Assembly: GCF_036321535.1 (NCBI RefSeq)
Contig: NC_087473.1
Location: 13,206,001 to 13,270,000, forward strand
From: Camelus dromedarius
Taxonomy: Eukaryota
Direction: 5' to 3'
DNA length: 64,000 bases
This document shows, piece by piece, positions 1,682 to 58,073 of this stretch. The notes under the pieces were generated by a model. The model made no database searches and was not told where the DNA came from. It saw only the letters and a list, made by a program, of their open reading frames with translations. Both the position numbers and the translations under genes were made by a program. Each line of letters begins with the position of its first letter. Position 1 is the first letter of the stretch.

Positions 1682-1755
<74 letters not shown>

Positions 1756-2121
1756 CAGCAGCAGCAAGTATACAGGTTTGGCCCAGAAGCCGGGGATGTC
1801 CTGGATGATGGCTTTTCTTCGATCCAAACGAGGCTCCCGCCTCCGTCGGATCCTGCGCTTGAGCCGCAAGTAGGCCCCGCTGGCTTGGGCGTTCACAGCG
1901 CTCTGCTCTAACTGAAGGGCCCCCAGCGCCTCCAGCGGGCTCAGAGAGGTCGGGGGTCCGCTCCCTGGCTCTGCGCGCCCCTGCTTCCGGGGCTTCTCTT
2001 CCCGCTCCTTGGCCTGCACCTCCTCCTCCTCCTCCTCCTCCCGCGGCTCCTGCTCCTCCTGCTCCTCCTCCGCCACCACCTCCTCCATGTCGTCCGCCAG
2101 CAGCGCCAACGCCTCCCCCAT
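99..2121 (-). CDS. TSPY: TSPY-like protein, copy 1 (partial; exons 4-5 outside window). Exon 1 coding 2121-1774, exon 2 488-411, exon 3 210-99
   Basis: Exon 1 ends ...IIQDIPGFWAKP|gtatac. Exon 2 is IVNHPQLSALISDRDEGVRSYMIQLE (78 nt, aag|...|gtcagg). Exon 3 is AQELGRPEYRCRLMFFFRSKPYLCNQVILKEYHLSFAG (112 nt, cag|...|gtaggt). The start shown is the first ATG after the in-frame TGA at 2175-2173; the true start is uncertain. Confidence 0.88.
1684..1767. repeat. Interrupted CAG/CTG repeat in intron 1, copy 1: (CAG)4 CAA (CAG)5 CAA (CAG)12 TAG (CAG)3 CAA
   Basis: Read directly; 28 triplets, ending 7 nt from the exon-1 boundary. Confidence 0.97.
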
Positions 2122-2172
2122 GCCCACAACCTCCGCCTCTGTCGATGCAGCTGCTGCCGCTGCCGCCGCCGC

Positions 2173-2619
2173 TCACTCCCGCACGGCCTCCACCCTCAGG
2201 CTGCTGGCCTCCTCGCACCTGCCACCCGCTAGTGCCTGCTCTGTTCCCAGCCCTGCCATGGCAGCGGGAGGCCCGCGGGCCCCTGCCTCCTGAAGGCCCC
2301 CTCCCACAGCTAAGGCCACCCAGGATTCCTGGGGAGCCCCGCCTTCCCCGGGCCCCCGCCTCACTGGCCCTGTGGCCCTGGCCCTGAGCTGCGAGCCGCA
2401 GCTGCCAATGCCGAGGAACAAGGAGCGGGAGGTGGAGGCGTAGCACGTGGCCGGAGGAGCCGGCCGAGCGGCCGAGGTCCCCGCGCGCAGGCGCTGCCGC
2501 TGGCGCTGGCGCTGGCGCTCCGCGCTTGGGTCTTCCAGGGCTCGCTGCCGCCCGGACCCGGCGGCCTGCTGTGCGGCCCCCTGGCAGCTGGGGCGCATGG
2601 GCATGGCCTCGTACCCCAT
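2173..2619 (-). pseudogene. Stop-severed TSPY N-terminal segment / upstream in-frame ORF, copy 1 (ATGs at 2619, 2604, 2598, 2259; TGA 2175-2173)
   Basis: Same frame as the NAP-domain ORF. Its end GLGTEQALAGGRCEEASSLRVEAVRE* aligns by eye to the recalled human TSPY N-terminus [28 protein letters not shown]. Confidence 0.7.
2491..2520. repeat. (GCTGGC)n hexamer run encoding RQRQRQ in the upstream ORF; 12 bp shorter in copies 4, 5 and 7
   Basis: Direct comparison between units. Confidence 0.9.
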
Positions 2620-2765: not shown

Positions 2766-3144
2766 CCGGGAACCCGGCCGGCCGCCTGGCCTCCGCAGCC
2801 CCAGCTTTCAGCCCAGCTCCCTGCCCAGCTTCCAGGGGGCACCTGGGCCGCGCGCTGCCTCCAGGGAGGCCTCCGGCCTTGCATCTCTCTGGCACTGCCC
2901 GGCGGCCCGCTGACACCTCTTCGGTTTCTGTCACCTCCCACCACGTGCCCCCCACCTCCCCACCCCACCCCCAACCCCACCCCCGACCACCTGTCACTCC
3001 GGTTTCACGCGGCCCCTTCACCCCCTGGGAAATCTGCTAAGCTCCAGAGGGAAAGACAGCCCGGGTACTTTGCTTCCAGCCAGTGTCTGTCAGAGTTGAA
3101 CTGCTCTGCTCTAGGGGACAAAAGCCATGCAGCAGCGTGTTCTC

Positions 3145-3312
3145 TTTGTCTTCGCTCTCTCTCCCTGTCTCCCCCTTGCTGTGACTCTCCCGCGTCTCTC
3201 TCTGTGTGTCTCTGCGCCTCTCTGCGTGTGGCCGTGCGTGTGTGGGTGGGTGTGCGTGTGAGTGTCTCCGCTTCCGCTCTCTCCCTCCCTCCCTCGCCCC
3301 CTCCCCTCCCGT
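3145..3312. repeat. Low-complexity CT/GT-rich tract upstream of the promoter (every unit)
   Basis: Degenerate (CT)n, (GT)n, (GCGT)n and (CCCT)n runs. Confidence 0.75.
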
Positions 3313-4019
3313 TCCCGGGATCTCTGTTAGCTCCCACAGACACATAATGGCTTTCAGAAAGCTACCCTGCCCGGAAATAGAAGACCTCTCCGCCCGGGCC
3401 AGCGGAACCCCACAGTCTGGACGTGGGCGTGTCCACACCATTGCACGACGGCCCTTCCTGTGCTAGAGAGGCCAGGCCGTGCCTTTCTCCCAGCCAGCAA
3501 AGGTGACCGGCATCCGTCGCCGCCGGGATCGCCCGACACTGCGCAAGACGAAGCCCTGGCCAGCCTGTGCAGAGAGAGACAGGCAGAGGGACGACGCGGT
3601 TTGCCGGCACGCTGGACCCACCCCCCCCCCCACCCTCCACCCCGCCCCGAACAGTGGTGTTTGGCAGCCCAGACAGTAAGGTGTTTAGGACGCCACCCGG
3701 GTCGGCGGCCACCGCACGGCACGCCTTCAGCGCCGCAGACGGAAGGAAGTGACTTCTGCCCGCAGTGTGAACGCCCTTGGAGGTGGTTCCGCTCTCGCCC
3801 AGCCTCCAGATGAGCACCCGTCCCAGCCTTCGCCTTCACTGCAGCCTTTCTCGCCGACAAAGCCAGTGTGTGCCACTTGCTAATGCAGCGCTGCTGGTCG
3901 GCCTCCCGAACCTTACCAAACAAGCAAGGCAAGGTGTTTCCTGTCGGCCTACTCGGAGGGAGGACAGGACGCGTGTGCCGCCGCCAAGGAGCTCAAGGTT
4001 CAAAGGCGGTTGTCGCTCT

Positions 4020-4043
4020 GGGGGCGGGGGCGGGGGCGGGGGG
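4020..4043 (+). repeat. G5CG5CG5CG6 run (canonical G-quadruplex motif), every unit
   Basis: Four runs of at least 5 G with 1-nt loops. Confidence 0.85.
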
Positions 4044-4268
4044 CCCTGGTCTTCCGCACGCGGCAAGCAATCTGCCCTATCCTATTTCCTGCGTCCTTCG
4101 CACCTTCCCTGTCTCTCCAGAAAGCACGGGACTTCCCCACTGCCTCTTCTGGCAGCCCGGTGATTCCAGCTGGCCCAGAGTCGACGTCCGTTTCGAAAGC
4201 CTGTCACGTTTTCAGGGTCCGTGCACGCACGCCTGCCTTCGAGCCCCACTCTCAGGCCTCCTCACCAG

Positions 4269-4294
4269 ACACGCACACGCACACGCACACGCAC
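4269..4294. repeat. (ACACGC)4 alternating purine-pyrimidine microsatellite, every unit
   Basis: Read directly. Confidence 0.85.
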
Positions 4295-7200
4295 GAGCGG
4301 AGGCACACCTGCACGCGTGCAGACCTATACGTCTACACGCTGCCCGCCGTCTGTGTTTCCAGGAGAAAGGATTTTTTACCTGCGCCCCTCTCGCCCCGCT
4401 CCCGCAGCCCGTCGTGTGAGTCCTTGTTCTCTCCCCGGATATTGCTGCCTTCCGCCCGCCTGGGTTGGCTTCTCTCCCAGCTGCCTTTGACTGCCGGACC
4501 GCGGGAAGCACACAGGCACGACGTCATTTCCCTTGGTCCTCTCTCACCAAGCGGAGAGGAATCTCAAGCTGTCTGGGGCCTAGCCGTCTTGGAGCTCACC
4601 TGTCCCTTCCTGCCGATGTCCCGGGCGCTCCAGTGCCCCCAGTGAGCTTCCCAGCGAGATGCTCGTGCCCTCCTTTGCTCTGCACGAGCACGTGTCTGCC
4701 CTGAACTGCCTTCTTGTTGCCTCTCACACGGCCTTCGGAGGCCCCTGGCAGCCAGGGCTCTTTGCAAGAGCTGTCTTCCTGTAGCACAAGAGGGCCAAGT
4801 GTAAGCTGTCTTGCCGAAGCGTCCCACACAAGGTCCTTAAGAATGTGGGGATCACCGCCTGTCTGAAGGAAGAAGCCAGTGAAGCCGAGCAGGGAAGGGT
4901 CAGGTGGCCGCCCTTCCCGTCCTGCCGTCTGCCGCAGAGCCTGCCGCGACACACACGGGCAGGCGCGCACTCACTCACAGACACGCACGCTCGCACGCAC
5001 ACTCACGCGCAGAGCCACCTCGGGAATCTTGCAGGCCCTGGGACCAGAGATCGTGCCTCCCTGGGGCGGAAGGCAGCATGCCTTTTCGTGTGCCCGGAGC
5101 CCTGGCTACCACTCAGGGGCCTCAGGGGCTTTGTAAATGTCAGGGCTACCGTTCGGCCTCTCTGGATCCTTCTCTGCTGGCCACGCCCACGGCTCAGGTA
5201 TCCCTCGTGGCCTACACGTCCCTCAGGCCACACGCTCCAGGTCACGGGTGGGCCAGGCCACATCCAAGGGGCCGACTTAAGACGGGCGGTGACCCGTCGG
5301 CGCCCCCTGGCCCAGACCTCTCGCGGGTCGCCTGTGACAAGAGCGGAGGACGGGCCGCAGCATCACAGGCCAGAGACGTGCAAGGCGCCAGCCGCACACG
5401 GACGTGCGTGCATGTGAGGCGTGATGGAGGGCAGGGAGCCGGGGCACCTGACAGGGGGGCTCCCGGCCACAGTCAGACAAACAGACACAGATGCATCCGC
5501 GGCAAGAGGGGAGCAAGACGGGCAAGGCCCACCCAGAAACTGCCTTTCCACGCAGGACACCAGCAAGCCCCTGGCCAACGTCCGTACGCCCGACCCGTCC
5601 TGCGACAGTGGGAGCCTGCCCGTGCGCACTTCCATCGATGAGGGAGACCAGCGCCGGACATGTCGTCGCGCCTGGGACTGCCCGGGTGCCCTGGTACCCG
5701 CAGGGGCGGCACGGAGGATGTGGGTCCTCCACCGTGGGACAACACCTGAAGGTAAGGGCCCGAGTGAAATGCCCCAGCAGGCATGGCCAGTTCCCACGTC
5801 CGTCTGAGCTTTGTCCGAGCCCCAGGAAGAATCCCACTTAAGCCGCGTCGCGTCCTCCAGGTTGGACCGCAAGGCCCGGCCACGGCACCCGAGCCTACGG
5901 GGGCCGGCTGCCTGTAAGCCTTCCTCCCCTACCCGTTGCCGGCTCGACACGTTCCCCGCCTCCACTGCAGGGCAGGCCGGACCCGACCCCAGCCGTGGCG
6001 CCTACGGGCGCTTGGGGCGGCAAAGGTCGAGCGAGCCTTGTGAGAACCCTGCCCAATCATTCCTCGAGTCTCTCCCCTTTGGCAGGTCCTTCTCAAGAGC
6101 CCTGGCCAGGCCTAGAGGCCTGAGGGGCCGCGGCCCTGCGGGGCGCCCACCACGGCCGCCTCAGCCCTCCCTCTGGGCCCCAGCCGCAGGGTCCCTGCAA
6201 CGCAGCTGCCCTCGTGCCTTCAGAGCAGGGGAACCTAGGCACTGACCTGGGGAAGGGGCGAGGACAGCAGCAGCCCGAGCGGGACAAGAGGGGACCTCTG
6301 CCACCCTACGATTGTACACGGAGGCTCTCCGGCCTTCGGGTCCCCAAACCCGACAGGCCGCAGCTGGTAGCGGACAGCCGGTGCCGCTGGGAGGCCAGGG
6401 AGGGCTGGGATCCATGAACCTCCCACCGCAACCCTCCACGACCGTGAAACGTTCTGCTGGGGCAGTCGGTCAAGCACACCCCCAAAGTGCGGCAAAGCAG
6501 GGGCGCTGTGGGGTGTCGTCGGGGACAGAGATGCTCACCACGCGGCCAAACTGCAAGGGACCGGGAGGGAGAGAGGGGGCACGCACCGCGCTCTCCCAGG
6601 CCCGGCTGTCCCACAGACGGTGCCTAGCTTTGTGCGGGGACCTCAGGTGTCTCCGGAAAGCGGCTGTCCCCTCGGGAAGGACCCCGCCGGGTGCTGGCCA
6701 CCGACTGCCCTCCCCATCCCGTCTCGTCCCGCCCCCCACCCCAGACCTGCCCACTCGCCACCCCCCCAACACACACAGCCCCCCACCGCCTGCCGCCATC
6801 CCTCCCACAGGCCCCTTGCCCAAGATCTGTCTGCACCAGGACTGTCCCCTTCCGGTGGCCTGATGCCCAGGCAGCTCGGGGCTGTGTGTTGGAGGGATGT
6901 GTGGCTGGCAGTTCCCTGACCAGGACAGAGCCGCAGGGACTGTGTCCCGAGGAGAAGCGTGAGTTACTCTGAACGTTCGGGCCCCTTAGCTAGCCAGCGC
7001 AGACTCGGGTAGAAGCTTTCGGCCTACGTGTCACACAGCCTGAAGAGCGGCACAGCCCGCCACGGCGCAACGCCGGCGTGGGAGAGAGGGGAGGCGGCAC
7101 ACTGCCGGTCTGGGGCGGCGCGGGCCCTGCGGCCCCGCCCCCTGACCTTCGCCCCTCGGACTGTTGCGCCCCACGAGGAGACCCCAGGGAAAGGAAGGCG

Positions 7201-8891
7201 CTCACGCCCCGGGAGGCCTTTCCAGCAGGGGGAAGGGGCTCCTGTCTGCCACTTCCTCTCCTCCCCAAGACCCCGGAGCCTGAAAGCCAGCAATCTCGCT
7301 GCTGCCCCAGCCCCCGGAGGCGCCGGTCTTTTCCGCTCCCGCCCAGCCCCCGCCCGCAAACAGCCCGGCACCCTTGCCCGCCTGCTCCCCTGCTCCCTCA
7401 CCCGCACAGCCTCACGCGCCGGCACGGGGCCACAGCCGCAGCTCACGCCCGCCTTTCCCTCACACTTGCTTGGACCCCTGCACCGCCCCACCCAGCCAGG
7501 GCTGAGCGGGGTCATGCCCGGAAGGATTCCACACTCACAGCCTGCCTCCTGGGGCGCCTGGGGGTGAACAGGGACCCTCGGCTTAAGAAGTCGCCCGTCT
7601 GGCGTGGGGCCGACGGCTGGCGCACACCCCAGACGGAGGGGGCTGAGTGAGGCTCCGCGAGCAGAGTGAACACTGAACCCAAGCCACAGCGGGCCACGAG
7701 GCCCCTACCCGCCAGCACCGGTCCCCGTCTCCTTCCCCGGCCCACGCAACAGGTCCCCAGCGCACCAGCCTGTCTCTTTCGTTGCTTCCTGCTCCGAGAC
7801 CCTGCCCTGTTCGGAGGCAACCTGGCCTCCCCGGAGCAGCAGCCGAGTCCTGCCCTTCCCACGTCCTCCACTTCCTCAGGACCGCCTCTCTGCCACACAC
7901 GGGCAGCCGGTTCAAAAGCCCCACCGGACTGGGCCGGAACATCGCCAATCGGCGACCCGCGAACAATCACACAGGACGGGAGCAAGACAGGAGCACTCGT
8001 TAGCTTGTTGATGTCTCTCTCGGCCTCATTCCGGGTACGTGCTGCCCACCCTCTGCAACCTCCACTGGCGATCCTTTCCTCGTTCCTCTCCGTTGCCCCA
8101 GACCCCGGCCGCCGGCCTCCCGCGTCTGCACGCGCCTCCGGGCTCTCCTTCTACTCGGCCGAACTCGCCTGCTCCGTCGCCTTCACCGCCAGCTCTGCAG
8201 GACCACCGACGCGTGAGAAAGCCTGCTCGCGGGCACGCGTGCACAGAACGACACGGACACGCTCGGGAACAACACAAGGCGTAGCTGAAGCGGCCTGTGT
8301 CCAACAGACAACCGGAGAGATGGCGCACAACAGGCAGCACGCCCCGCCCTTTCTCCCCGGCGCCTCCCCGCTGGCCACCAGCCAGCCTGCGGCCCTTTCC
8401 AGGGCCGTCCGGGTGGAGCCAGGTCGCTAAGGGATGCGCCTGGACATTCAGGGAAGACTGGGAGAACCAGCCCAGGAGAGGGACGGGACGCGACCCGGGA
8501 GCCCACCTCCTCAGCGTCTGGAGGCCTTGGCCATGCGGCCGGGGGCGGACGGAGGGGCCCAGCTGATCCCAAACGCGGAGGCAGTCGGACGAGGCCCCAG
8601 GGAGGGCCGAAGCCAGGAAGTGCCGACGCACATGAGGGTGCCTGAGGAGGCCCGCTCCTTTCTCGGACACCCCTGGGACGTTCACCGAAAGCTGAAAGCT
8701 TCGGTGCTCTGCGCGTGCGCCTGGGTCCTCCGGGCCCCTGGCTCACCCTCGCGCCCGCTCCCTGGGCGGCCTGGGGTCGCCCCGCTCCCAGGCTTCTCTC
8801 AGCCTGCCTCTCCCCGATTGGGAAAGGGTCCGGGAAACACTCTTCACCAACACCCCCAGCCCCCCGGGCTCCTCAGGGACGTGTCCCCCTC

Positions 8892-10924
8892 TCAGTTACC
8901 TCTCCCGGCGCCTTGCTCCCTCGGGTAGCAGCGCAGGGGGTTGGGCCACAGGTCCTCGCCGATGATCTGGCAGAGGGAACGGGCAGGTCGGGACAGGGCC
9001 CACACCCCTTCCCCGAGCAGCTGGCCACCGCCGACGTCGCCATTTCCGACCAGGCCCCGAGGGACCCCCACCTCAGCAATCCCGTTAGACCCGGGGCACT
9101 TGTGGCCTGACAACCAGTTGAGGAAGTGAAGACTGACGGTGTCCTGCCTGCGGCTGGGGGCTCCCCGTTCGTAATCCCAGAACCACTGGACTGGAGTGGA
9201 ACTATACGCCCTATAGCCTAGAGGAAGAGTGGGGATACGGGGAGGGATCGCCCTGGCCCAGCGTCCAAGGCCTCCGGGGCACACCCCGCCCCGCCCCGCC
9301 CCGCTCCGCTCCCTTCCCCCATCCCGGGACAGCCCACCTACCTGCGAAGCTAAGGTGATACTCCTTAAGGATCACTTGGTTGCACAAGTAGGGCTTGCTC
9401 CGGAAAAAGAACATCAGTCTGCAGCGGTACTCGGGGCGGCCCAGTTCCTGCGCCTGCCACGCCCAACAGCAGGAGAAGAGTGAACTCTCGTCCCGGCCAC
9501 CTGAGCTGGCCTGCCCGGCAGGGATGAACCACTTCCCCTTCCGCTCTCCCGCTGCTCACACCCAGCCCTCGGGGACACCCGGCCCCCTCCGCCCCGCATC
9601 CCCCATCCCCCACCCCCCACCCCCCACCGTGGCCTCCGTCTGCCCGGCCTGACCTCCAGCTGGATCATGTAGCTCCGCACACCTTCGTCTCGGTCACTGA
9701 TCAAGGCCGACAGCTGGGGATGATTCACAATCTTCAGTAGGTCAAGGAGCCTTCACGTGTTACGGCTGGAAGAGCCACAGCCAACACAGCCAGGCTGGGG
9801 CGAAAGGAAGAGACCAGACAGGCGATCTGCCGGGACTCCGGGCGCGCACTGCTGCCCACCCCATCGCCCCACACCTCCGACCTCCTCGGCCCCTGCCCTG
9901 CCGTCTCACACGCACGTGGAGGCGGGGTTCCGGCCTTCCCGTGCATCTTGGGCTGTCCGCACCCCCTCGGGGAGCGCCTGTTCCCTCGATCGTCCCCGAC
10001 ATTCCAGCTGGCCTGCGTGTGCTGGGTGCAGGCTTGTCACCGCGGGCGGAGTCGGGATGTGCTCTGCCCCCGTGGACCCATGCCTCCTCTGAGTAGGGGA
10101 CGCCCCAGGGGTGCTGACAGGAAGCCCCGGGCCTCTGAGCCGCCCTCTGCGGTGAGAGGAGTCTGTCTGTATGGCTAAGTCTGCAGCTCCGGGGGACTCA
10201 CAGGGTGCAACGGGGAGGGCACGTGCTTCTGCCTGCACGAGAAGGCCCGGTGGAGGCCGGGCTCGGAGCCCACCCGAGGGCGTGTCTGGGGTCCCGTAGT
10301 CTTGCCCGGGACGGGGGCCTCTTGCAGCTCACACCTGGCCGCGGACGACCTGGGTCCTTGGCACGGACGTGGCGGCAACATATCCACAGCCTCTGGCTGA
10401 CTGGGATGGGTCCTGCACGCCCACCGGTCTCCTGGGATTTCCCCCGGAGACTGCACACTTCCACTCTCTGCTCTGTGGGGAAGGTGCTGGGGGCTCTGCG
10501 CGTGCTTTCCACTGTTGCCGTGTGCCCCATGACCCCAGCAAGGCTTCCCCTGCAGGCCCCACGCCAGAAGGTTCCACCCAAATTTGGCGCTCCCACGCCT
10601 GCACGTTTGGCCTTTGGCCCTCAGCGCCCTCATGCTGTGCCCTTGCAGGCCTCCATGCCTCCACTCTCAGGCCTCTTCCCTTGGCCTTGGCGCCCGCCTT
10701 CCTCGCTTCCTCCTGCCCCTTGTTCCGCCGCTCCCAGTCCTCCTCTTCTTTCTCCTCCTGCTTCCCCTCCCCACCCTGCCCTGCGCCCCCGCACCCAGAC
10801 CCCCGGCCCTGGCCCCGGCCCCAGTCCGTTGCCGCCTCCCCTCCTCCTCCCCCTGTCCCAACCTCCTTCTCGCCCTGTTCCCCCTCCTCGGCCCCCTCCT
10901 GCCCTCCAGCAGCAGCCAGCCCCA

Positions 10925-10995
<71 letters not shown>

Positions 10996-11361
10996 CAGCA
11001 GCAGCAAGTATACAGGTTTGGCCCAGAAGCCGGGGATGTCCTGGATGATGGCTTTTCTTCGATCCAAACGAGGCTCCCGCCTCCGTCGGATCCTGCGCTT
11101 GAGCCGCAAGTAGGCCCCGCTGGCTTGGGCGTTCACAGCGCTCTGCTCTAACTGAAGGGCCCCCAGCGCCTCCAGCGGGCTCAGAGAGGTCGGGGGTCCG
11201 CTCCCTGGCTCTGCGCGCCCCTGCTTCCGGGGCTTCTCTTCCCGCTCCTTGGCCTGCACCTCCTCCTCCTCCTCCTCCTCCCGCGGCTCCTGCTCCTCCT
11301 GCTCCTCCTCCGCCACCACCTCCTCCATGTCGTCCGCCAGCAGCGCCAACGCCTCCCCCAT
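8892..11361 (-). CDS. TSPY: TSPY-like protein, copy 2. Exons 11361-11014, 9731-9654, 9453-9342, 9217-9072, 8966-8892; 252 aa from the MGEAL ATG
   Basis: The spliced frame is open with GT-AG introns. NAP motifs IPGFW, NHPQ, FFRSKPY, KEY, STPVQW, FLNW, IAE and DLWPNPL are present. There is no C-terminal acidic tail (unlike TSPX/TSPYL2), and introns are present (unlike the intronless TSPYL retrogenes). Upstream in-frame TGA at 11415-11413. Confidence 0.9.
10927..11007. repeat. Interrupted CAG/CTG repeat, copy 2 (27 triplets, middle run of 11)
   Basis: Read directly. Confidence 0.97.
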
Positions 11362-11412
11362 GCCCACAACCTCCGCCTCTGTCGATGCAGCTGCTGCCGC
11401 TGCCGCCGCCAC

Positions 11413-11859
11413 TCACTCCCGCACGGCCTCCACCCTCAGGCTGCTGGCCTCCTCGCACCTGCCACCCGCTAGTGCCTGCTCTGTTCCCAGCCCTGCCATG
11501 GCAGCGGGAGGCCCGCGGGCCCCTGCCTCCTGAAGGCCCCCTCCCACAGCTAAGGCCACCCAGGATTCCTGGGGAGCCCCGCCTTCCCCGGGCCCCCGCC
11601 TCACTGGCCCTGTGGCCCTGGCCCTGAGCTGCGAGCCGCAGCTGCCAATGCCGAGGAACAAGGAGCGGGAGGTGGAGGCGTAGCACGTGGCCGGAGGAGC
11701 CGGCCGAGCGGCCGAGGTCCCCGCGCGCAGGCGCTGCCGCTGGCGCTGGCGCTGGCGCTCCGCGCTTGGGTCTTCCAGGGCTCGCTGCCGCCCGGACCCG
11801 GCGGCCTGCTGTGCGGCCCCCTGGCAGCTGGGGCGCATGGGCATGGCCTCGTACCCCAT
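11413..11859 (-). pseudogene. Stop-severed TSPY N-terminal segment, copy 2
   Basis: As copy 1; ORF-track entry 11413..11958 ends in RVEAVRE*. Confidence 0.7.
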
Positions 11860-14800
11860 CCCCGCCACGCCCCACGAGGCCCGTGGGAATTTGCAGCTTG
11901 GCTGGAAGGAGGCCCGAGTCGAGTCGGGCCCAGGCCGCTCGCCCCACCTCCCGACCAATCGGGGAGCGGCCAGTGGGCGTCACCCTGCAAGGCCCCGCCC
12001 CCCGGCCGGGAACCCGGCCGGCCGCCTGGCCTCCGCAGCCCCAGCTTTCAGCCCAGCTCCCTGCCCAGCTTCCAGGGGGCACCTGGGCCGCGCGCTGCCT
12101 CCAGGGAGGCCTCCGGCCTTGCATCTCTCTGGCACTGCCCGGCGGCCCGCTGACACCTCTTCGGTTTCTGTCACCTCCCACCACGTGCCCCCCACCTCCC
12201 CACCCCACCCCCAACCCCACCCCCGACCACCTGTCACTCCGGTTTCACGCGGCCCCTTCACCCCCTGGGAAATCTGCTAAGCTCCAGAGGGAAAGACAGC
12301 CCGGGTACTTTGCTTCCAGCCAGTGTCTGTCAGAGTTGAACTGCTCTGCTCTAGGGGACAAAAGCCATGCAGCAGCGTGTTCTCTTTGTCTTCGCTCTCT
12401 CTCCCTGTCTCCCCCTTGCTGTGACTCTCCCGCGTCTCTCTCTGTGTGTCTCTGCGCCTCTCTGTGTGTGGCCGTGCGTGTGTGGGTGGGTGTGCGTGTG
12501 AGTGTCTCCGCTTCCGCTCTCTCCCTCCCTCCCTCGCCCCCTCCCCTCCCGTTCCCGGGATCTCTGTTAGCTCCCACAGACACATAATGGCTTTCAGAAA
12601 GCTACCCTGCCCGGAAATAGAAGACTTCTCCGCCCGGGCCAGCGGAACCCCACAGTCTGGACGTGGGCGTGTCCACACCATTGCACGAAGGCCCTTCCTG
12701 TGCTAGAGAGGCCAGGCCGTGCCTTTCTCCCAGCCAGCAAAGGTGACCGGCATCCGTCGCCGCCGGGATCGCCCGACACTGCGCAAGACGAAGCCCTGGC
12801 CAGCCTGTGCAGAGAGAGACAGGCAGAGGGACGACGCGGTTTGCCGGCACGCTGGACCCACCCCCCCCCCACCCTCCACCCCGCCCCGAACAGTGGTGTT
12901 TGGCAGCCCAGACAGTAAGGTGTTTAGGACGCCACCCGGGTCGGCGGCCACCGCACGGCACGCCTTCAGCGCCGCAGACGGAAGGAAGTGACTTCTGCCC
13001 GCAGTGTGAACGCCCTTGGAGGTGGTTCCGCTCTCGCCCAGCCTCCAGATGAGCACCCGTCCCAGCCTTCGCCTTCACTGCAGCCTTTCTCGCCGACAAA
13101 GCCAGTGTGTGCCACTTGCTAATGCAGCGCTGCTGGTCGGCCTCCCGAACCTTACCAAACAAGCAAGGCAAGGTGTTTCCTGTCGGCCTACTCGGAGGGA
13201 GGACAGGACGCGTGTGCCGCCGCCAAGGAGCTCAAGGTTCAAAGGTGGTTGTCGCTCTGGGGGCGGGGGCGGGGGCGGGGGGCCCTGGTCTTCCGCACGC
13301 GGCAAGCAATCTGCCCTATCCTATTTCCTGCGTCCTTCGCACCTTCCCTGTCTCTCCAGAAAGCACGGGACTTCCCCACTGCCTCTTCTGGCAGCCCGGT
13401 GATTCCAGCTGGCCCAGAGTCGACGTCCGTTTCGAAAGCCTGTCACGTTTTCAGGGTCCGTGCACGCACGCCTGCCTTCGAGCCCCACTCTCAGGCCTCC
13501 TCACCAGACACGCACACGCACACGCACACGCACGAGCGGAGGCACACCTGCACGCGTGCAGACCTATACGTCTACACGCTGCCCGCCGTCTGTGTTTCCA
13601 GGAGAAAGGATTTTTTACCTGCGCCCCTCTCGCCCCGCTCCCGCAGCCCGTCGTGTGAGTCCTTGTTCTCTCCCCGGATATTGCTGCCTTCCGCCCGCCT
13701 GGGTTGGCTTCTCTCCCAGCTGCCTTTGACTGCCGGACCGCGGGAAGCACACAGGCACGACGTCATTTCCCTTGGTCCTCTCTCACCAAGCGGAGAGGAA
13801 TCTCAAGCTGTCTGGGGCCTAGCCGTCTTGGAGCTCACCTGTCCCTTCCTGCCGATGTCCCGGGCGCTCCAGTGCCCCCAGTGAGCTTCCCAGCGAGATG
13901 CTCGTGCCCTCCTTTGCTCTGCACGAGCACGTGTCTGCCCTGAACTGCCTTCTTGTTGCCTCTCACACGGCCTTCGGAGGCCCCTGGCAGCCAGGGCTCT
14001 TTGCAAGAGCTGTCTTCCTGTAGCACAAGAGGGCCAAGTGTAAGCTGTCTTGCCGAAGCGTCCCACACAAGGTCCTTAAGAATGTGGGGATCACCGCCTG
14101 TCTGAAGGAAGAAGCCAGTGAAGCCGAGCAGGGAAGGGTCAGGTGGCCGCCCTTCCCGTCCTGCCGTCTGCCGCAGAGCCTGCCGCGACACACACGGGCA
14201 GGCGCGCACTCACTCACAGACACGCACGCTCGCACGCACACTCACGCGCAGAGCCACCTCGGGAATCTTGCAGGCCCTGGGACCAGAGATCGTGCCTCCC
14301 TGGGGCGGAAGGCAGCATGCCTTTTCGTGTGCCCGGAGCCCTGGCTACCACTCAGGGGCCTCAGGGGCTTTGTAAATGTCAGGGCTACCGTTCGGCCTCT
14401 CTGGATCCTTCTCTGCTGGCCACGCCCACGGCTCAGGTATCCCTCGTGGCCTACACGTCCCTCAGGCCACACGCTCCAGGTCACGGGTGGGCCAGGCCAC
14501 ATCCAAGGGGCCGACTTAAGACGGGCGGTGACCCGTCGGCGCCCCCTGGCCCAGACCTCTCGCGGGTCGCCTGTGACAAGAGCGGAGGACGGGCCGCAGC
14601 ATCACAGGCCAGAGACGTGCAAGGCGCCAGCCGCACACGGACGTGCGTGCATGTGAGGCGTGATGGAGGGCAGGGAGCCGGGGCACCTGACAGGGGGGCT
14701 CCCGGCCACAGTCAGACAAACAGACACAGATGCATCCGCGGCAAGAGGGGAGCAAGACGGGCAAGGCCCACCCAGAAACTGCCTTTCCACGCAGGACACC

Positions 14801-20653: not shown

Positions 20654-21100
20654 TCACTCCCGCACGGCCTCCACCCTCAGGCTGCTGGCCTCCTCGCACC
20701 TGCCACCCGCTAGTGCCTGCTCTGTTCCCAGCCCTGCCATGGCAGCGGGAGGCCCGCGGGCCCCTGCCTCCTGAAGGCCCCCTCCCACAGCTAAGGCCAC
20801 CCAGGATTCCTGGGGAGCCCCGCCTTCCCCGGGCCCCCGCCTCACTGGCCCTGTGGCCCTGGCCCTGAGCTGCGAGCCGCAGCTGCCAATGCCGAGGAAC
20901 AAGGAGCGGGAGGTGGAGGCGTAGCACGTGGCCGGAGGAGCCGGCCGAGCGGCCGAGGTCCCCGCGCGCAGGCGCTGCCGCTGGCGCTGGCGCTGGCGCT
21001 CCGCGCTTGGGTCTTCCAGGGCTCGCTGCCGCCCGGACCCGGCGGCCTGCTGTGCGGCCCCCTGGCAGCTGGGGCGCATGGGCATGGCCTCGTACCCCAT
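20654..21100 (-). pseudogene. Stop-severed TSPY N-terminal segment, copy 3
   Basis: As copy 1; ORF-track entry 20654..21199. Confidence 0.7.
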
Positions 21101-27372: not shown

Positions 27373-29877
27373 TCAGTTACCTCTCCCGGCGCCTTGCTCC
27401 CTCGGGTAGCAGCGCAGGGGGTTGGGCCACAGGTCCTCGCCGATGATCTGGCAGAGGGAACGGGCAGGTCGGGACAGGGCCCACACCCCTTCCCCGAGCA
27501 GCTGGCCACCGCCGACGTCGCCATTTCCGACCAGGCTCCGAGGGACCCCCACCTCAGCAATCCCGTTAGACCCGGGGCACTTGTGGCCTGACAACCAGTT
27601 GAGGAAGTGAAGGCTGACGGTGTCCTGCCTGCGGCTGGGGGCTCCCCGTTCGTAATCCCAGAACCACTGGACTGGAGTGGAACTATACGCCCTATAGCCT
27701 AGAGGAAGAGTGGGGATACGGGGAGGGATCGCCCTGGCCCAGCGTCCAAGGCCTCCGGGGCACACCCCGCCCCGCCCCGCCCCGCCCCGCTCCGCTCCCT
27801 TCCCCCATCCCGGGACAGCCCACCTACCTGCGAAGCTAAGGTGATACTCCTTAAGGATCACTTGGTTGCACAAGTAGGGCTTGCTCCGGAAAAAGAACAT
27901 CAGTCTGCAGCGGTACTCGGGGCGGCCCAGTTCCTGCGCCTGCCACGCCCAACAGCAGGAGAAGAGTGAACTCTCGTCCCGGCCACCTGAGCTGGCCTGC
28001 CCGGCAGGGATGAACCACTTCCCCTTCCGCTCTCCCGCTGCTCACACCCAGCCCTCGGGGACACCCGGCCCCCTCCGCCCCGCATCCCCCATCCCCCACC
28101 CCCCACCCCCCACCGTGGCCTCCGTCTGCCCGGCCTGACCTCCAGCTGGATCATGTAGCTCCGCACACCTTCGTCTCGGTCACTGATCAAGGCCGACAGC
28201 TGGGGATGATTCACAATCTTCAGTAGGTCAAGGAGCCTTCACGTGTTACGGCTGGAAGAGCCACAGCCAACACAGCCAGGCTGGGGCGAAAGGAAGAGAC
28301 CAGACAGGCGATCTGCCGGGACTCCGGGCGCGCACTGCTGCCCACCCCATCGCCCCACACCTCCGACCTCCTCGGCCCCTGCCCTGCCGTCTCACACGCA
28401 CGTGGAGGCGGGGTTCCGGCCTTCCCGTGCATCTTGGGCTGTCCGCACCCCCTCGGGGAGCGCCTGTTCCCTCGATCGTCCCCGACATTCCAGCTGGCCT
28501 GCGTGTGCTGGGTGCAGGCTTGTCACCGCGGGCGGAGTCGGGATGTGCTCTGCCCCCGTGGACCCATGCCTCCTCTGAGTAGGGGACGCCCCAGGGGTGC
28601 TGACAGGAAGCCCCGGGCCTCTGAGCCGCCCTCTGCGGTGAGAGGAGTCTGTCTGTATGGCTAAGTCTGCAGCTCCGGGGGACTCACAGGGTGCAACGGG
28701 GAGGGCACGTGCTTCTGCCTGCACGAGAAGGCCCGGTGGAGGCCGGGCTCGGAGCCCACCCGAGGGCGTGTCTGGGGTCCCGTAGTCTTGCCCGGGACGG
28801 GGGCCTCTTGCAGCTCACACCTGGCCGCGGACGACCTGGGTCCTTGGCACGGACGTGGCGGCAACATATCCACAGCCTCTGGCTGACTGGGATGGGTCCT
28901 GCACGCCCACCGGTCTCCTGGGATTTCCCCCGGAGACTGCACACTTCCACTCTCTGCTCTGTGGGGAAGGTGCTGGGGGCTCTGCGCGTGCTTTCCACTG
29001 TTGCCGTGTGCCCCATGACCCCAGGAAGGCTTCCCCTGCAGGCCCCACGCCAGAAGGTTCCACCCAAATTTGGCGCTCCCACGCCTGCACGTTTGGCCTT
29101 TGGCCCTCAGCGCCCTCATGCTGTGCCCTTGCAGGCCTCCATGCCTCCACTCTCAGGCCTCTTCCCTTGGCCTTGGCGCCCGCCTTCCTCGCTTCCTCCT
29201 GCCCCTTGTTCCGCCGCTCCCAGTCCTCCTCTTCTTTCTCCTCCTGCTTCCCCTCCCCACCCTGCCCTGCGCCCCCGCACCCAGACCCCCGGCCCTGGCC
29301 CCGGCCCCAGTCCGTTGCCGCCTCCCCTCCTCCTCCCCCTGTCCCAACCTCCTTCTCGCCCTGTTCCCCCTCCTCGGCCCCCTCCTGCCCTCCAGCNNNN
29401 NNNNNNNNNNNNNNNNNNNNNNNNNNNNNNNNNNNNNNNNNNNNNNNNNNNNNNNNNNNNNNNNNNNNNNNNNNNNNNNNNNNNNNNNNNNNNNNNNNNN
29501 NNNNNNNNNNNNNNNNNNNNNNNNNNNNNNNNNNNNNNNCAGAAGCCGGGGATGTCCTGGATGATGGCTTTTCTTCGATCCAAACGAGGCTCCCGCCTCC
29601 GTCGGATCCTGCGCTTGAGCCGCAAGTAGGCCCCGCTGGCTTGGGCGTTCACAGCGCTCTGCTCTAACTGAAGGGCCCCCAGCGCCTCCAGCGGGCTCAG
29701 GGAGGTCGGGGGTCCGCTCCCTGGCTCTGCGCGCCCCTGCTTCCGGGGCTTCTCTTCCCGCTCCTTGGCCTGCACCTCCTCCTCCTCCTCCTCCTCCCGC
29801 GGCTCCTGCTCCTCCTGCTCCTCCTCCGCCACCACCTCCTCCATGTCGTCCGCCAGCAGCGCCAACGCCTCCCCCAT
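27373..29877 (-). CDS. TSPY: TSPY-like protein, copy 4. Exon 1 from 29877 with its donor hidden in the N gap (about 29530); exons 28217-28140, 27939-27828, 27698-27553, 27447-27373
   Basis: Same motifs. The end of exon 1 and the intron-1 donor fall in Ns at 29397-29539. Upstream in-frame TGA at 29931-29929. Confidence 0.85.
29397..29539. other. Assembly gap of 143 N covering the copy-4 CAG/CTG repeat and exon-1 donor
   Basis: Run of N. The flanks match positions 1667 and 1784 of unit 1, where the intervening sequence is 116 nt. Confidence 0.99.
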
Positions 29878-29928: not shown

Positions 29929-30363
29929 TCACTCCCGCACGGCCTCCACCCTCAGGCTGCTGGCCTCCTCGCACCTGCCACCCGCTAGTGCCTGCTCTGT
30001 TCCCAGCCCTGCCATGGCAGCGGGAGGCCCGCGGGCCCCTGCCTCCTGAAGGCCCCCTCCCACAGCTAAGGCCACCCAGGATTCCTGGGGAGCCCCGCCT
30101 TCCCCGGGCCCCCGCCTCACTGGCCCTGTGGCCCTGGCCCTGAGCTGCGAGCCGCAGCTGCCAATGCCGAGGAACAAGGAGCGGGAGGTGGAGGCGTAGC
30201 ACGTGGCCGGAGGAGCCGGCCGAGCGGCCGAGGTCCCCGCGCGCAGGCGCTGCCGCTGGCGCTCCGCGCTTGGGTCTTCCAGGGCTCGCTGCCGCCCGGA
30301 CCCGGCGGCCTGCTGTGCGGCCCCCTGGCAGCTGGGGCGCATGGGCATGGCCTCGTACCCCAT
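29929..30363 (-). pseudogene. Stop-severed TSPY N-terminal segment, copy 4 (12-bp in-frame deletion)
   Basis: As copy 1; ORF-track entry 29929..30462. Confidence 0.7.
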
Positions 30364-35474: not shown

Positions 35475-35491
35475 ACGCAGCGCTCGACTGT
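35475..35491 (-). other. Probable PacBio barcode bc1008 (ACAGTCGAGCGCTGCGT) embedded in the assembly; technical artefact
   Basis: ACGCAGCGCTCGACTGT replaces the 18-mer CTTCCCCGGCCCAC(G/A)CAA found in all other units. Its reverse complement equals the bc1008 barcoded-overhang-adapter sequence as I recall it. Confidence 0.88.
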
Positions 35492-39157: not shown

Positions 39158-39592
39158 TCACTCCCGCACGGCCTCCACCCTCAGGCTGCTGGCCTCCTCG
39201 CACCTGCCACCCGCTAGTGCCTGCTCTGTTCCCAGCCCTGCCATGGCAGCGGGAGGCCCGCGGGCCCCTGCCTCCTGAAGGCCCCCTCCCACAGCTAAGG
39301 CCACCCAGGATTCCTGGGGAGCCCCGCCTTCCCCGGGCCCCCGCCTCACTGGCCCTGTGGCCCTGGCCCTGAGCTGCGAGCCGCAGCTGCCAATGCCGAG
39401 GAAGAAGGAGCGGGAGGTGGAGGCGTAGCACGCGGCCGGAGGAGCCGGCCGAGCGGCCGAGGTCCCCGCGCGCAGGCGCTGCCGCTGGCGCTCCGCGCTT
39501 GGGTCTTCCAGGGCTCGCTGCCGCCCGGACCCGGCGGCCTGCTGTGCGGCCCCCTGGCAGCTGGGGCGCATGGGCATGGCCTCGTACCCCAT
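39158..39592 (-). pseudogene. Stop-severed TSPY N-terminal segment, copy 5 (12-bp in-frame deletion)
   Basis: As copy 1; ORF-track entry 39158..39691. Confidence 0.7.
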
Positions 39593-48387: not shown

Positions 48388-48834
48388 TCACTCCCGCACG
48401 GCCTCCACCCTCAGGCTGCTGGCCTCCTCGCACCTGCCACCCGCTAGTGCCTGCTCTGTTCCCAGCCCTGCCATGGCAGCGGGAGGCCCGCGGGCCCCTG
48501 CCTCCTGAAGGCCCCCTCCCACAGCTAAGGCCACCCAGGATTCCTGGGGAGCCCCGCCTTCCCCGGGCCCCCGCCTCACTGGCCCTGTGGCCCTGGCCCT
48601 GAGCTGCGAGCCGCAGCTGCCAATGCCGAGGAACAAGGAGCGGGAGGTGGAGGCGTAGCACGTGGCCGGAGGAGCCGGCCGAGCGGCCGAGGTCCCCGCG
48701 CGCAGGCGCTGCCGCTGGCGCTGGCGCTGGCGCTCCGCGCTTGGGTCTTCCAGGGCTCGCTGCCGCCCGGACCCGGCGGCCTGCTGTGCGGCCCCCTGGC
48801 AGCTGGGGCGCATGGGCATGGCCTCGTACCCCAT
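48388..48834 (-). pseudogene. Stop-severed TSPY N-terminal segment, copy 6
   Basis: As copy 1; ORF-track entry 48388..48933. Confidence 0.7.
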
Positions 48835-57638: not shown

Positions 57639-58073
57639 TCACTCCCGCACGGCCTCCACCCTCAGGCTGCTGGCCTCCTCGCACCTGCCACCCGCTAGTG
57701 CCTGCTCTGTTCCCAGCCCTGCCATGGCAGCGGGAGGCCCGCGGGCCCCTGCCTCCTGAAGGCCCCCTCCCACAGCTAAGGCCACCCAGGATTCCTGGGG
57801 AGCCCCGCCTTCCCCGGGCCCCCGCCTCACTGGCCCTGTGGCCCTGGCCCTGAGCTGCGAGCCGCAGCTGCCAATGCCGAGGAACAAGGAGCGGGAGGTG
57901 GAGGCGTAGCACGTGGCCGGAGGAGCCGGCCGAGCGGCCGAGGTCCCCGCGCGCAGGCGCTGGCGCTGGCGCTCCGCGCTTGGGTCTTCCAGGGCTCGCT
58001 GCCGCCCGGACCCGGCGGCCTGCTGTGCGGCCCCCTGGCAGCTGGGGCGCATGGGCATGGCCTCGTACCCCAT
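57639..58073 (-). pseudogene. Stop-severed TSPY N-terminal segment, copy 7 (12-bp in-frame deletion)
   Basis: As copy 1; ORF-track entry 57639..58172. Confidence 0.7.

What the first reader, a model, noticed from the sequence alone, without database searches (positions are those of the whole stretch)
2173..2175. A single in-frame TGA is fixed in all seven TSPY copies while the downstream NAP domain stays intact
Seen: TGA at 2175-2173, 11415-11413, 20656-20654, 29931-29929, 39160-39158, 48390-48388 and 57641-57639. It separates a stop-free upstream frame from the NAP ORF, and no readable downstream coding exon has a stop or frameshift. Recalled knowledge: the position matches a Gly in human TSPY ([10 protein letters not shown]), and homology continues upstream of the stop, so it looks like a nonsense change spread through the array by concerted evolution. 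Filling the stop and starting at the strong-context gccATGG (2259) gives about 298 aa, close to normal TSPY length. Inference, three options: (a) a whole amplified array of a young pseudogene; (b) a lineage-specific 252-aa TSPY starting at MGEAL through re-initiation or a downstream TSS, with the old N-terminus turned into a repressive uORF that buffers dosage from many copies; (c) recoding by readthrough or A-to-I editing of UGA to UGG.
Basis: partly seen in the sequence, partly recalled or inferred. Interest (0 to 1): 0.85.

Follow-up and report, generated by a model that had tools for sequence, protein, structure and literature searches.

The report
Shared early stop in camelid TSPY array
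Seven near-identical tandem copies of the Y-linked testis gene TSPY, in a llama/alpaca-like genome, share one recent stop-codon mutation near the start of the gene; this fits the known pattern of TSPY arrays carrying disabled or shortened copies and is not a sign of special recoding.

Summary
TGA lies at all seven stated positions on the minus strand, 28 codons after a strong-context ATG and 17 codons before an in-frame Met (MGEAL). Exons 1-5 are open, with GT-AG junctions, in all six complete copies.

The seven copies are not independent. The 9.24-kb units are 99.67-99.93% identical, so this is one mutation carried by a young or homogenised sub-array.

It is a derived nonsense change. Six Camelus TSPY copies have a sense codon here (GGA in five, GAA in one). 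Cattle, fallow deer and one whale also have Gly. The closest Camelus ferus copy is collinear and fully open.

Published male-specific alpaca TSPY primers map once per unit, so the window is probably a Lamini Y chromosome.

Function is undecided, and I lean to relaxed constraint:
- The protein departs at 6 of 38 positions invariant in 22 other mammalian TSPYs. Four of these are private to this lineage, and two of those are also conserved in SET.
- Exon divergence from camel (5.3%) equals intron divergence (5.7%).
- Coding variation among copies is not reduced.
- Against this, the branch dN/dS is about 0.4.

A truncated protein starting at Met47 remains a serious rival. Recoding has no support: no SECIS, an unfavourable stop context and no unusual RNA structure.

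Earlier notes from this scan, which I could not check, report other TSPY clusters about 1.1 Mb away in the same genome.

The parts
2173..2175 (-). In-frame TGA (codon 29), copy 1. The same codon is at 11413-11415, 20654-20656, 29929-29931, 39158-39160, 48388-48390 and 57639-57641.
   Evidence: The aligned codon is GGA in Camelus copies B, C, D, E and F, and GAA in copy A.
2257..2259 (-). ATG1 (MAGLGTEQ...), context gccATGg. This is the start used by full-length Camelus ferus TSPY models. It recurs in every copy, 84 nt upstream of each TGA.
2119..2121 (-). In-frame Met47 (MGEAL), context ggcATGg, 51 nt after the TGA. It is the candidate start of an N-truncated protein. The Met is camelid-specific; other mammals have Ile, Leu, Ala or other residues here.
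   Evidence: NCBI models P0006-P0008 and P0010 start at this Met.
2596..2619 (-). Three further upstream ATGs (2619, 2604, 2598) in the same frame. If they are transcribed, they open ORFs of 148, 143 and 141 aa that end at the TGA.
11014..11499 (-). Exon 1 of copy 2, from ATG1 to the donor CCT|GTATAC. It holds the stop, a poly-Ala run, an acidic tract and the start of the NAP region.
   Evidence: The same donor position is used in Camelus.
9654..9731 (-). Exon 2 of copy 2 (IVNHPQLSALISDRDEGVRSYMIQLE).
9342..9453 (-). Exon 3 of copy 2.
   Evidence: Weak Pfam NAP hit (16.4 bits, below the cut-off).
9072..9217 (-). Exon 4 of copy 2.
8900..8966 (-). Exon 5 of copy 2. Exon 6 is uncertain; candidate acceptors lie near 8294 and further downstream.
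   Evidence: plus the C-terminal tails of the Camelus models.
2776..12015 (-). One complete 9240-bp repeat unit (the phase is arbitrary). There are six complete units up to 58241, plus partial units at both ends of the window.
   Evidence: pairwise identity 99.67-99.93%; the whole unit is collinear with the C. ferus unit at about 90-93%.
29397..29539 (.). Masked N run over the exon 1/intron 1 junction of copy 4. Left unfilled.
2988..3117 (+). Site of the published alpaca primer pair TSPY-1 (transcript-derived, male-specific). The amplicon is 130 bp, as published, and occurs once per unit.
3667..4102 (+). Site of the published alpaca primer pair TSPY-2. The amplicon is 436 bp here against 409 bp published, and occurs once per unit.

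Best explanation
**Shown.**
- One G-to-T change turned the ancestral Gly codon 29 (GGA) of a camelid TSPY gene into TGA.
- All copies of a tandem sub-array of 9.24-kb units now carry that allele.
- These copies can no longer make the full-length protein that starts at MAGL.

**Inferred.**
- The allele spread by recent amplification or by gene conversion (concerted evolution).
- This sub-array is under relaxed selection. It behaves as a young, probably still transcribed, pseudogene-like array, and at most makes small amounts of an N-truncated protein that is not needed.
- Intact TSPY function would then come from other TSPY clusters on the same Y.
For: **Derived state.**
- All six Camelus copies examined have a sense codon at this site. 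The closest one, C. ferus copy E in L003, is collinear over all 46 upstream codons and open through exon 5.
- Cattle, fallow deer and one whale have Gly at this site.

**Single event.**
- The units are 99.67-99.93% identical.
- The TGA sits on both local haplotypes, TGA-GCG and TGA-GTG.

**Relaxed constraint.**
- The window protein departs at 6 of 38 positions that are invariant in 22 non-camelid TSPYs. R82G, D133G, L135R and N162K are private to this lineage. Intact camel copies E and F depart at 1.
- L135 and N162 (the NPYF motif) are also conserved in human SET.
- Exon divergence from camel E is 5.3%. Introns are 5.7% and the downstream flank 3.9%.
- Within the array, coding SNV density is 5 in 751 nt, not lower than about 24 in 8,100 nt of non-coding DNA. 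Copy 5 carries E142Q at a conserved site.

**Translation context.** ATG1 has a strong Kozak context, so if it is in the mRNA it should capture scanning ribosomes (read from the sequence).

**Known precedent.** Disabled copies are common in TSPY arrays.
- Chimpanzee has 21 pseudogenes against 6 active genes, and Mus has only an inactive copy (PMC3924835, PMC3954093).
- Of the six Camelus copies seen here, four carry a lesion: two upstream of Met47 and two downstream.

**Alpaca annotation.** The published testis-based annotation gives TSPY an ORF of only 140 aa (PMC7830431, Table 3).

**Other copies.** Earlier scan notes report other TSPY clusters about 1.1 Mb away, with coding N-termini. I could not check these.
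Against: - On the window branch, polarised with a whale outgroup, there are 8 synonymous and 11-12 non-synonymous changes. That gives omega of about 0.4, with binomial p = 0.044 against neutrality. Some constraint therefore acted on this lineage.
- No second disabling lesion exists in about 250 codons in any of six copies, and all splice sites are canonical. With copies this similar, that is nearly a single observation.
- Within-array coding variants are 3 synonymous to 2 non-synonymous (not significant).
- The stop is start-proximal (codon 29), and an in-frame AUG in good context lies 51 nt downstream. This arrangement can escape NMD and allow reinitiation (PMC12776119, PMC8775493).
- The 46 lost residues lie outside the NAP domain, in a region that had already lost its ancestral start codon in camelids.
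- All counts are small.
- The frameshifts in Camelus ferus copies could be assembly errors.
Confidence: 0.5

Rival explanations
1. These copies are functional and encode an N-terminally truncated TSPY of about 250 aa plus a tail, translated from the camelid-specific Met47 (MGEAL). Translation would start there in one of two ways. The main transcription start may lie downstream of ATG1. Alternatively, ribosomes may reinitiate after the 28-codon remnant ORF. On this view the old N-terminus is dispensable.
For: - The frame from Met47 to exon 5 is open, with canonical junctions, in all six complete copies.
- Met47 has context ggcATGg and lies 51 nt after a 28-codon ORF.
- Start-proximal stop codons often escape NMD, and reinitiation after them is documented (PMC12776119, PMC8775493).
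- The missing 46 residues precede the NAP domain. The alignment to SET begins at residue 120 of P0003.
- Two Camelus copies with independent upstream lesions keep an open NAP frame, and NCBI models them from the same Met. Copy A has a frameshift and dromedary copy D has an in-frame TAG (P0008, P0010).
- Camelids had already moved the start once. The ancestral M.SE..GEGG start seen in whales, carnivores and donkey is absent.
- Omega on the window branch is about 0.4.
Against: - Four private replacements fall at positions invariant in other mammalian TSPYs.
- Exon divergence equals intron divergence.
- Coding variants are not depleted within the array.
- ATG1 has a strong context, so leaky scanning should be rare.
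- If transcripts start upstream of 2619, an ORF of 141-148 codons precedes Met47 and reinitiation would be negligible.
- Alpaca transcript-derived primers map 0.7-1.8 kb upstream of ATG1. Their strand and their link to this gene are not known.
- The Camelus copies that start at Met47 were found because the annotation pipeline modelled them as proteins, which biases the sample.
- Lesions in Camelus copies are split 2 upstream to 2 downstream.
Confidence: 0.38
2. The UGA is recoded, so that full-length TSPY is still made. The routes would be translational readthrough, selenocysteine insertion, or A-to-I editing to UGG.
For: Only that the frame is open on both sides of the stop.
Against: - No SECIS or any other Rfam family reaches threshold anywhere in the 64 kb.
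- The base after the stop is G (UGA-GCG or UGA-GUG). This is not the UGA-CUAG type context known to promote readthrough in mammals (established knowledge).
- The A of UGA has a 5' G neighbour, which ADARs like least (established knowledge).
- The surrounding 201 nt fold no better than shuffled sequence: z = -0.65, and 50 of 200 shuffles fold at least as well.
Confidence: 0.02
3. The G-to-T change created a 5' splice donor (GA|GTGAGC or GA|GTGAGT) that removes the stop by alternative splicing.
For:
- The normal exon 1 donor CCT|GTATAC looks weak.
Against: - Joined to the exon 2 acceptor, the frame reads GAA TTG TGA and stops after two codons.
- No AG between the stop and Met47 restores the frame, and an intron that short would not be spliced in mammals.
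- These points come from reading the sequence. This splice would therefore disable the transcript, not rescue it.
Confidence: 0.03
4. The TGA is an assembly or polishing artefact.
For: Tandem arrays are hard to assemble.
Against: - Seven copies that differ at other positions, with 6-30 mismatches per pair, all carry it.
- It sits on two local haplotypes.
Confidence: 0.02

Closest known systems
Camelus ferus / C. dromedarius TSPY (NCBI models P0001-P0010; loci L001-L003)
   Same: - Same gene and the same compact tandem unit, collinear over the whole 9.2 kb at about 90-93% identity.
- Same exon boundaries.
- Same ATG1 and the same camelid-specific Met47.
- C. ferus copy E matches codon for codon across the upstream segment.
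   Different: - Camelus copies carry GGA (GAA in one) where the window has TGA.
- The window lineage also has R82G, A116P, Q130R, D133G, L135R and N162K in the NAP region.
TSPY pseudogene copies within arrays (chimpanzee: 21 pseudogenes against 6 active genes; human: 5; Mus Tspy-ps; PMC3924835, PMC3954093)
   Same: Unprocessed copies in or near tandem arrays that are disabled by point lesions while keeping their overall structure. The Mus copy is still transcribed.
   Different: - Here a single early stop is the only lesion, and every copy seen in this block carries it.
- An in-frame Met lies just downstream, so loss of function is not proven.
Start-proximal premature stops that escape NMD, with downstream reinitiation (HBB, LMNA, BRCA1, DSP/JUP; PMC12776119, PMC8775493)
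   Same: A stop at codon 29, inside the reported NMD-inactive zone of 21-100 codons, with an in-frame AUG in good context shortly after it.
   Different: Those are disease or engineered alleles with measured RNA and protein. Here nothing has been measured, and the transcription start site is unknown.
SET/TAF-I beta and NAP1 histone chaperones (PDB 7mto, 2e50)
   Same: The region encoded downstream of Met47 is the NAP-domain homologue. P0003 matches SET at E 1e-35.
   Different: The window protein replaces residues conserved between TSPY and SET, namely L135R and N162K in the NPYF motif.

Membership tests
TSPY (NAP/SET superfamily, PF00956) | Significant sequence similarity to TSPY proteins | tested here: met
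   exon 1 ORF against C. ferus TSPY, E 5e-57, 80% identity; exons 2-5 are 89-96% identical in DNA to Camelus exons.
TSPY (NAP/SET superfamily, PF00956) | NAP domain recognised by the Pfam model | tested here: inconclusive
   Single exons are too short. Only exon 3 gives a NAP hit, at 16.4 bits against a cut-off of 28.6. The spliced frame is collinear with P0003, which carries PF00956 and aligns to SET.
TSPY (NAP/SET superfamily, PF00956) | Conserved exon-intron structure with canonical junctions | tested here: met
   five exons with GT/AG, and the same boundaries as Camelus.
TSPY (NAP/SET superfamily, PF00956) | Male-specific (Y-linked) tandem array | tested here: met
   Tandem period of 9229-9275 bp. 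Published male-specific alpaca TSPY primers map once per unit. Y linkage of this assembly piece was not itself tested.
TSPY (NAP/SET superfamily, PF00956) | Uninterrupted ORF from the family's start codon | tested here: not met
   TGA at codon 29 in all seven copies.
Unprocessed pseudogene | Disabling lesion relative to the ancestral ORF | tested here: met
   GGA to TGA relative to six Camelus copies and to the Gly of other cetartiodactyls.
Unprocessed pseudogene | Neutral evolution of the former coding sequence | tested here: inconclusive
   For: exon divergence equals intron divergence, replacements at invariant sites and no depletion of coding SNVs. Against: branch omega of about 0.4, p = 0.044.
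Unprocessed pseudogene | No protein product | not testable with these tools
   Needs Ribo-seq or mass spectrometry.
uORF / reinitiation-dependent translation | Short upstream ORF followed by an AUG in good context | tested here: met
   A 28-codon ORF, a 51-nt spacer, then ggcATGg. This holds only if transcription starts between 2598 and 2259.
uORF / reinitiation-dependent translation | Transcription start site that puts only ATG1 in the leader | not testable with these tools
   No transcript data. Three further in-frame ATGs lie at 2619, 2604 and 2598.
Programmed stop-codon recoding (Sec, readthrough, editing) | SECIS element or a readthrough/editing-promoting context or structure | tested here: not met
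   No Rfam hit in 64 kb. Contexts are UGA-GCG and UGA-GUG. Fold z = -0.65.

The most novel reading that the evidence does not exclude
Camelid TSPY may be shortening its N-terminus step by step. The ancestral mammalian start was lost in the camelid ancestor, leaving MAGL as the start. In this lamine array the start has moved again, to the camelid-specific Met47. The result would be a working TSPY of about 250 aa, with its former N-terminus now a 28-codon upstream ORF that lowers output per copy.
Probability: 0.25. Interest if true: 0.5.

Novelty: new member of a known kind. Interest (0 to 1): 0.3.

Why it matters
TSPY is the standard example of a Y-linked ampliconic gene. Which copies in an array actually work matters for copy-number and fertility studies, and for genome annotation.

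For camelids, this block should not be counted as full-length TSPY. Annotators have to choose between calling it a pseudogene and giving it a downstream start.

It also shows clearly how one disabling mutation can come to occupy a whole sub-array on a non-recombining chromosome. Beyond that it is an ordinary case of a known pattern.

Tried and rejected
- **GC-biased gene conversion** as the driver of the odd replacements. Polarised coding changes on the window branch are 8 weak-to-strong, 6 strong-to-weak and 6 other. There is no clear bias.
- **Rescue by the new GTGAG donor.** It breaks the frame when joined to exon 2, and there is no in-frame acceptor (read from the sequence).
- **Selenocysteine or structured recoding signals.** Nothing found.
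- **Pfam on single exons.** They are too short to be informative.
- **'Three independent upstream lesions show the N-terminus is dispensable'.** This weakened once more Camelus copies were read. Their lesions are 2 upstream and 2 downstream, and copies modelled as proteins are a biased sample.
- **The long stop-free upstream frame as evidence of coding.** Other frames in the same GC-rich stretch are open for longer. The evidence for ancestral coding comes from homology instead.
- **Look-ups and runs that failed.** P0003 has no gene on record. A full MAFFT run on the units timed out and was redone with a faster setting. Earlier notes cannot be looked up by place outside the window.
- **Not attempted.**
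  - Comparison with human TSPY letters.
  - Filling the N run.
  - A structure prediction of the spliced protein, which has no single reference.

Full report
**What is in the window**

The 64-kb window holds a head-to-tail array of a 9.24-kb, 67% GC unit, with the genes on the minus strand. Each unit carries a TSPY gene.
- The exon 1 ORF matches Camelus ferus and C. dromedarius TSPY at E 5e-57 and about 80% identity.
- Exons 2-5 are 89-96% identical in DNA to the Camelus exons, with the same boundaries.
- The whole unit is collinear with the C. ferus unit.

Primer pairs published as transcript-derived and male-specific for alpaca TSPY (PMC7830431, Table S1) map once per unit.
- One pair gives exactly the published 130-bp product. 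The other gives 436 bp against the published 409 bp.
- Each reverse primer has two mismatches.

The window is therefore most likely from the Y chromosome of a New World camelid. I did not establish the species.

**Checking the observation**

TGA is present at all seven stated positions.
- It is codon 29 of a frame that opens at gccATGg (2259 in copy 1).
- Seventeen codons later there is an in-frame ggcATGg, the Met of MGEAL (2121 in copy 1).
- In the six complete copies, exons 1-5 are open and every junction is GT/AG.
- Copy 4's exon 1/intron 1 junction is hidden by the masked N run at 29397-29539, which I left alone. Copy 1 is cut by the window edge.

The weight put on 'all seven copies' does not hold. 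The units are 99.67-99.93% identical, so any given base is expected to be shared. This is one mutation. The TGA does sit on both local haplotypes (TGA-GCG in four copies, TGA-GTG in three), so it is at least as old as that difference, or conversion carried it across.

**The stop is derived**

I fetched six Camelus copies from L001, L002 and L003. At the aligned codon, five have GGA and one has GAA. C. ferus copy E is collinear with the window across all 46 upstream codons and open through exon 5.

In an alignment of mammalian N-termini:
- the site is Gly in cattle, fallow deer and one whale;
- it is Cys in delphinids;
- it is Ala in carnivores and donkey.

The upstream frame is also homologous to whale TSPY, even 20 residues beyond the camelid ATG (E 3e-08).

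The same alignment shows two more things.
- The start codon used by most mammals (M.SE..GEGG) is absent in camelids, which start at MAGL.
- The Met of MGEAL is specific to camelids.

**Does the array still work?**

Evidence for continued function:
- The frame from Met47 is open in all six complete copies.
- The stop is close to the start. The published NMD-inactive zone runs to 21-100 codons (PMC12776119), and reinitiation after such stops is documented (PMC8775493).
- The 46 lost residues lie outside the NAP domain.
- With Pseudorca as outgroup, the window branch has 8 synonymous and 11-12 non-synonymous changes over 191 codons. That is an omega of about 0.4, with p = 0.044 against neutrality.
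- Two Camelus copies with independent upstream lesions keep an open NAP frame, and NCBI models them from the same Met. Copy A has a frameshift and copy D has an in-frame TAG.

Evidence against continued function:
- Among 38 positions invariant in 22 non-camelid TSPYs, the window protein departs at six. R82G, D133G, L135R and N162K are private to this lineage. The intact camel copies E and F depart at one.
- L135 and the N of the NPYF motif are conserved even in human SET.
- Total exon divergence from camel E (5.3%) is no lower than intron divergence (5.7%), and it is above the downstream flank (3.9%).
- Among the copies, coding SNVs (5 in 751 nt; 3 synonymous, 2 non-synonymous) are not rarer than non-coding ones (about 24 in 8,100 nt). 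Copy 5 carries E142Q at a conserved residue.
- The other two lesion-bearing Camelus copies have theirs downstream of Met47: B in exon 2 and C in the part of exon 1 after Met47. Lesions in camelid TSPY copies are therefore not confined to the N-terminus.
- ATG1 has a strong initiation context.
- If transcripts begin upstream of 2619, in-frame ATGs open ORFs of 141-148 codons that end at the TGA. Reinitiation after an ORF that long is unlikely.
- The alpaca testis-based annotation lists only a 140-aa ORF for TSPY (PMC7830431, Table 3). This is close to those ORF lengths, but I could not link the two.

**Recoding and splicing**
- No Rfam family, SECIS included, reaches threshold in the window.
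- The stop contexts are UGA-GCG and UGA-GUG.
- The A of the stop has a 5' G neighbour.
- The local RNA fold is unremarkable (z = -0.65).
- The mutation does create GA|GTGAG(C/T), as another note from this scan points out. Splicing from it to exon 2 gives GAA TTG TGA, and there is no in-frame acceptor before Met47. It cannot rescue the frame.

**Verdict**

I am confident, at about 0.9, in three points:
- this is a derived GGA-to-TGA mutation;
- it counts as one event, because the copies are near-identical;
- the upstream segment was once coding.

Function is less certain. I put relaxed constraint, meaning a young pseudogene-like sub-array, at about 0.5. A working N-truncated protein from Met47 gets about 0.38. 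Recoding, splice rescue and assembly artefact together get under 0.1.

Two earlier notes from this scan (s1-175419, s1-182985) report other TSPY clusters 1.08-1.13 Mb beyond the window, one said to encode variable N-termini. I could not read that DNA.

TSPY arrays with disabled copies are well documented (PMC3924835, PMC3954093). This is a new member of a known kind, of moderate to low interest.

**Caveats**
- All counts are small.
- Frameshifts in the C. ferus assembly may be errors.
- The Camelus array sits on a 102-Mb record (CM020804.1) whose identity I did not check.
- Exon 6 and the true C-terminus are uncertain.

Noticed in passing
window 35475-35491 (unit 5); equivalent to 7732-7749 in unit 2: In unit 5 only, an intergenic patch of about 18 bp is replaced. 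TTGCGTGGGCCGGGGAAG in the other units reads ACAGTCGAGCGCTGCGTG here. This accounts for 11 of the 24 intergenic SNV columns. It is a complex event, not a set of point changes.
   Followed up: partly
window 2988-3117 and 3667-4102 (and once per unit): Alpaca TSPY primers designed from testis transcripts map 0.7-1.8 kb upstream of ATG1, which is also 4-5 kb downstream of the neighbouring copy. Much of the 'intergenic' DNA may therefore be transcribed, as a long leader, a long 3' UTR or a separate RNA. The strand is unknown.
   Followed up: partly
window 2596-2619 (and equivalents): Three in-frame ATGs upstream of ATG1 give ORFs of 148, 143 and 141 aa that end at the TGA. The alpaca Y paper lists a 140-aa ORF for its 4,880-bp, 7-exon TSPY transcript. 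The two may be connected.
   Followed up: no
L001 (C. ferus CM020804.1, 100.80 Mb), L003 (100.19 Mb), L002 (C. dromedarius CM070347.1, 9.85 Mb): Of the six Camelus TSPY copies, only E and F are fully open. A has a frameshift in the poly-Ala run. D has an in-frame TAG six codons before Met47. B has a +1 insertion in exon 2. C has a frameshift in exon 1 and an assembly gap. The C. ferus array lies near the end of a 102-Mb record.
   Followed up: partly
window 2119-2121 and the alignment: The Met of MGEAL is camelid-specific; cetaceans, ruminants, the donkey and carnivores have Ile, Leu, Ala or other residues. The start codon used by most other mammals is missing in camelids. The TSPY N-terminus had therefore already been shortened once in this lineage.
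   Followed up: partly
window 1684-1774 and equivalents: A (CTG)n run begins right after the weak exon 1 donor CCT|GTATAC and varies in length between copies. It accounts for most of the indel columns in intron 1. Another note (s1-183009) also flags it.
   Followed up: no
window 2172-2177 and equivalents: The G-to-T change that makes the stop also creates GA|GTGAGC, or GTGAGT in copies 2, 3 and 5. This is a donor-like motif stronger than the normal exon 1 donor. Using it with exon 2 would truncate the frame.
   Followed up: partly
protein P0011 (metaclust): A chimeric database protein joins a translation of TSPY intron 1 (MRALRAKGQTCRRGS..., matching the window ORF at 10175-10633), an unrelated segment, and part of Camelus-type exon 1. 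It looks like an annotation artefact.
   Followed up: no
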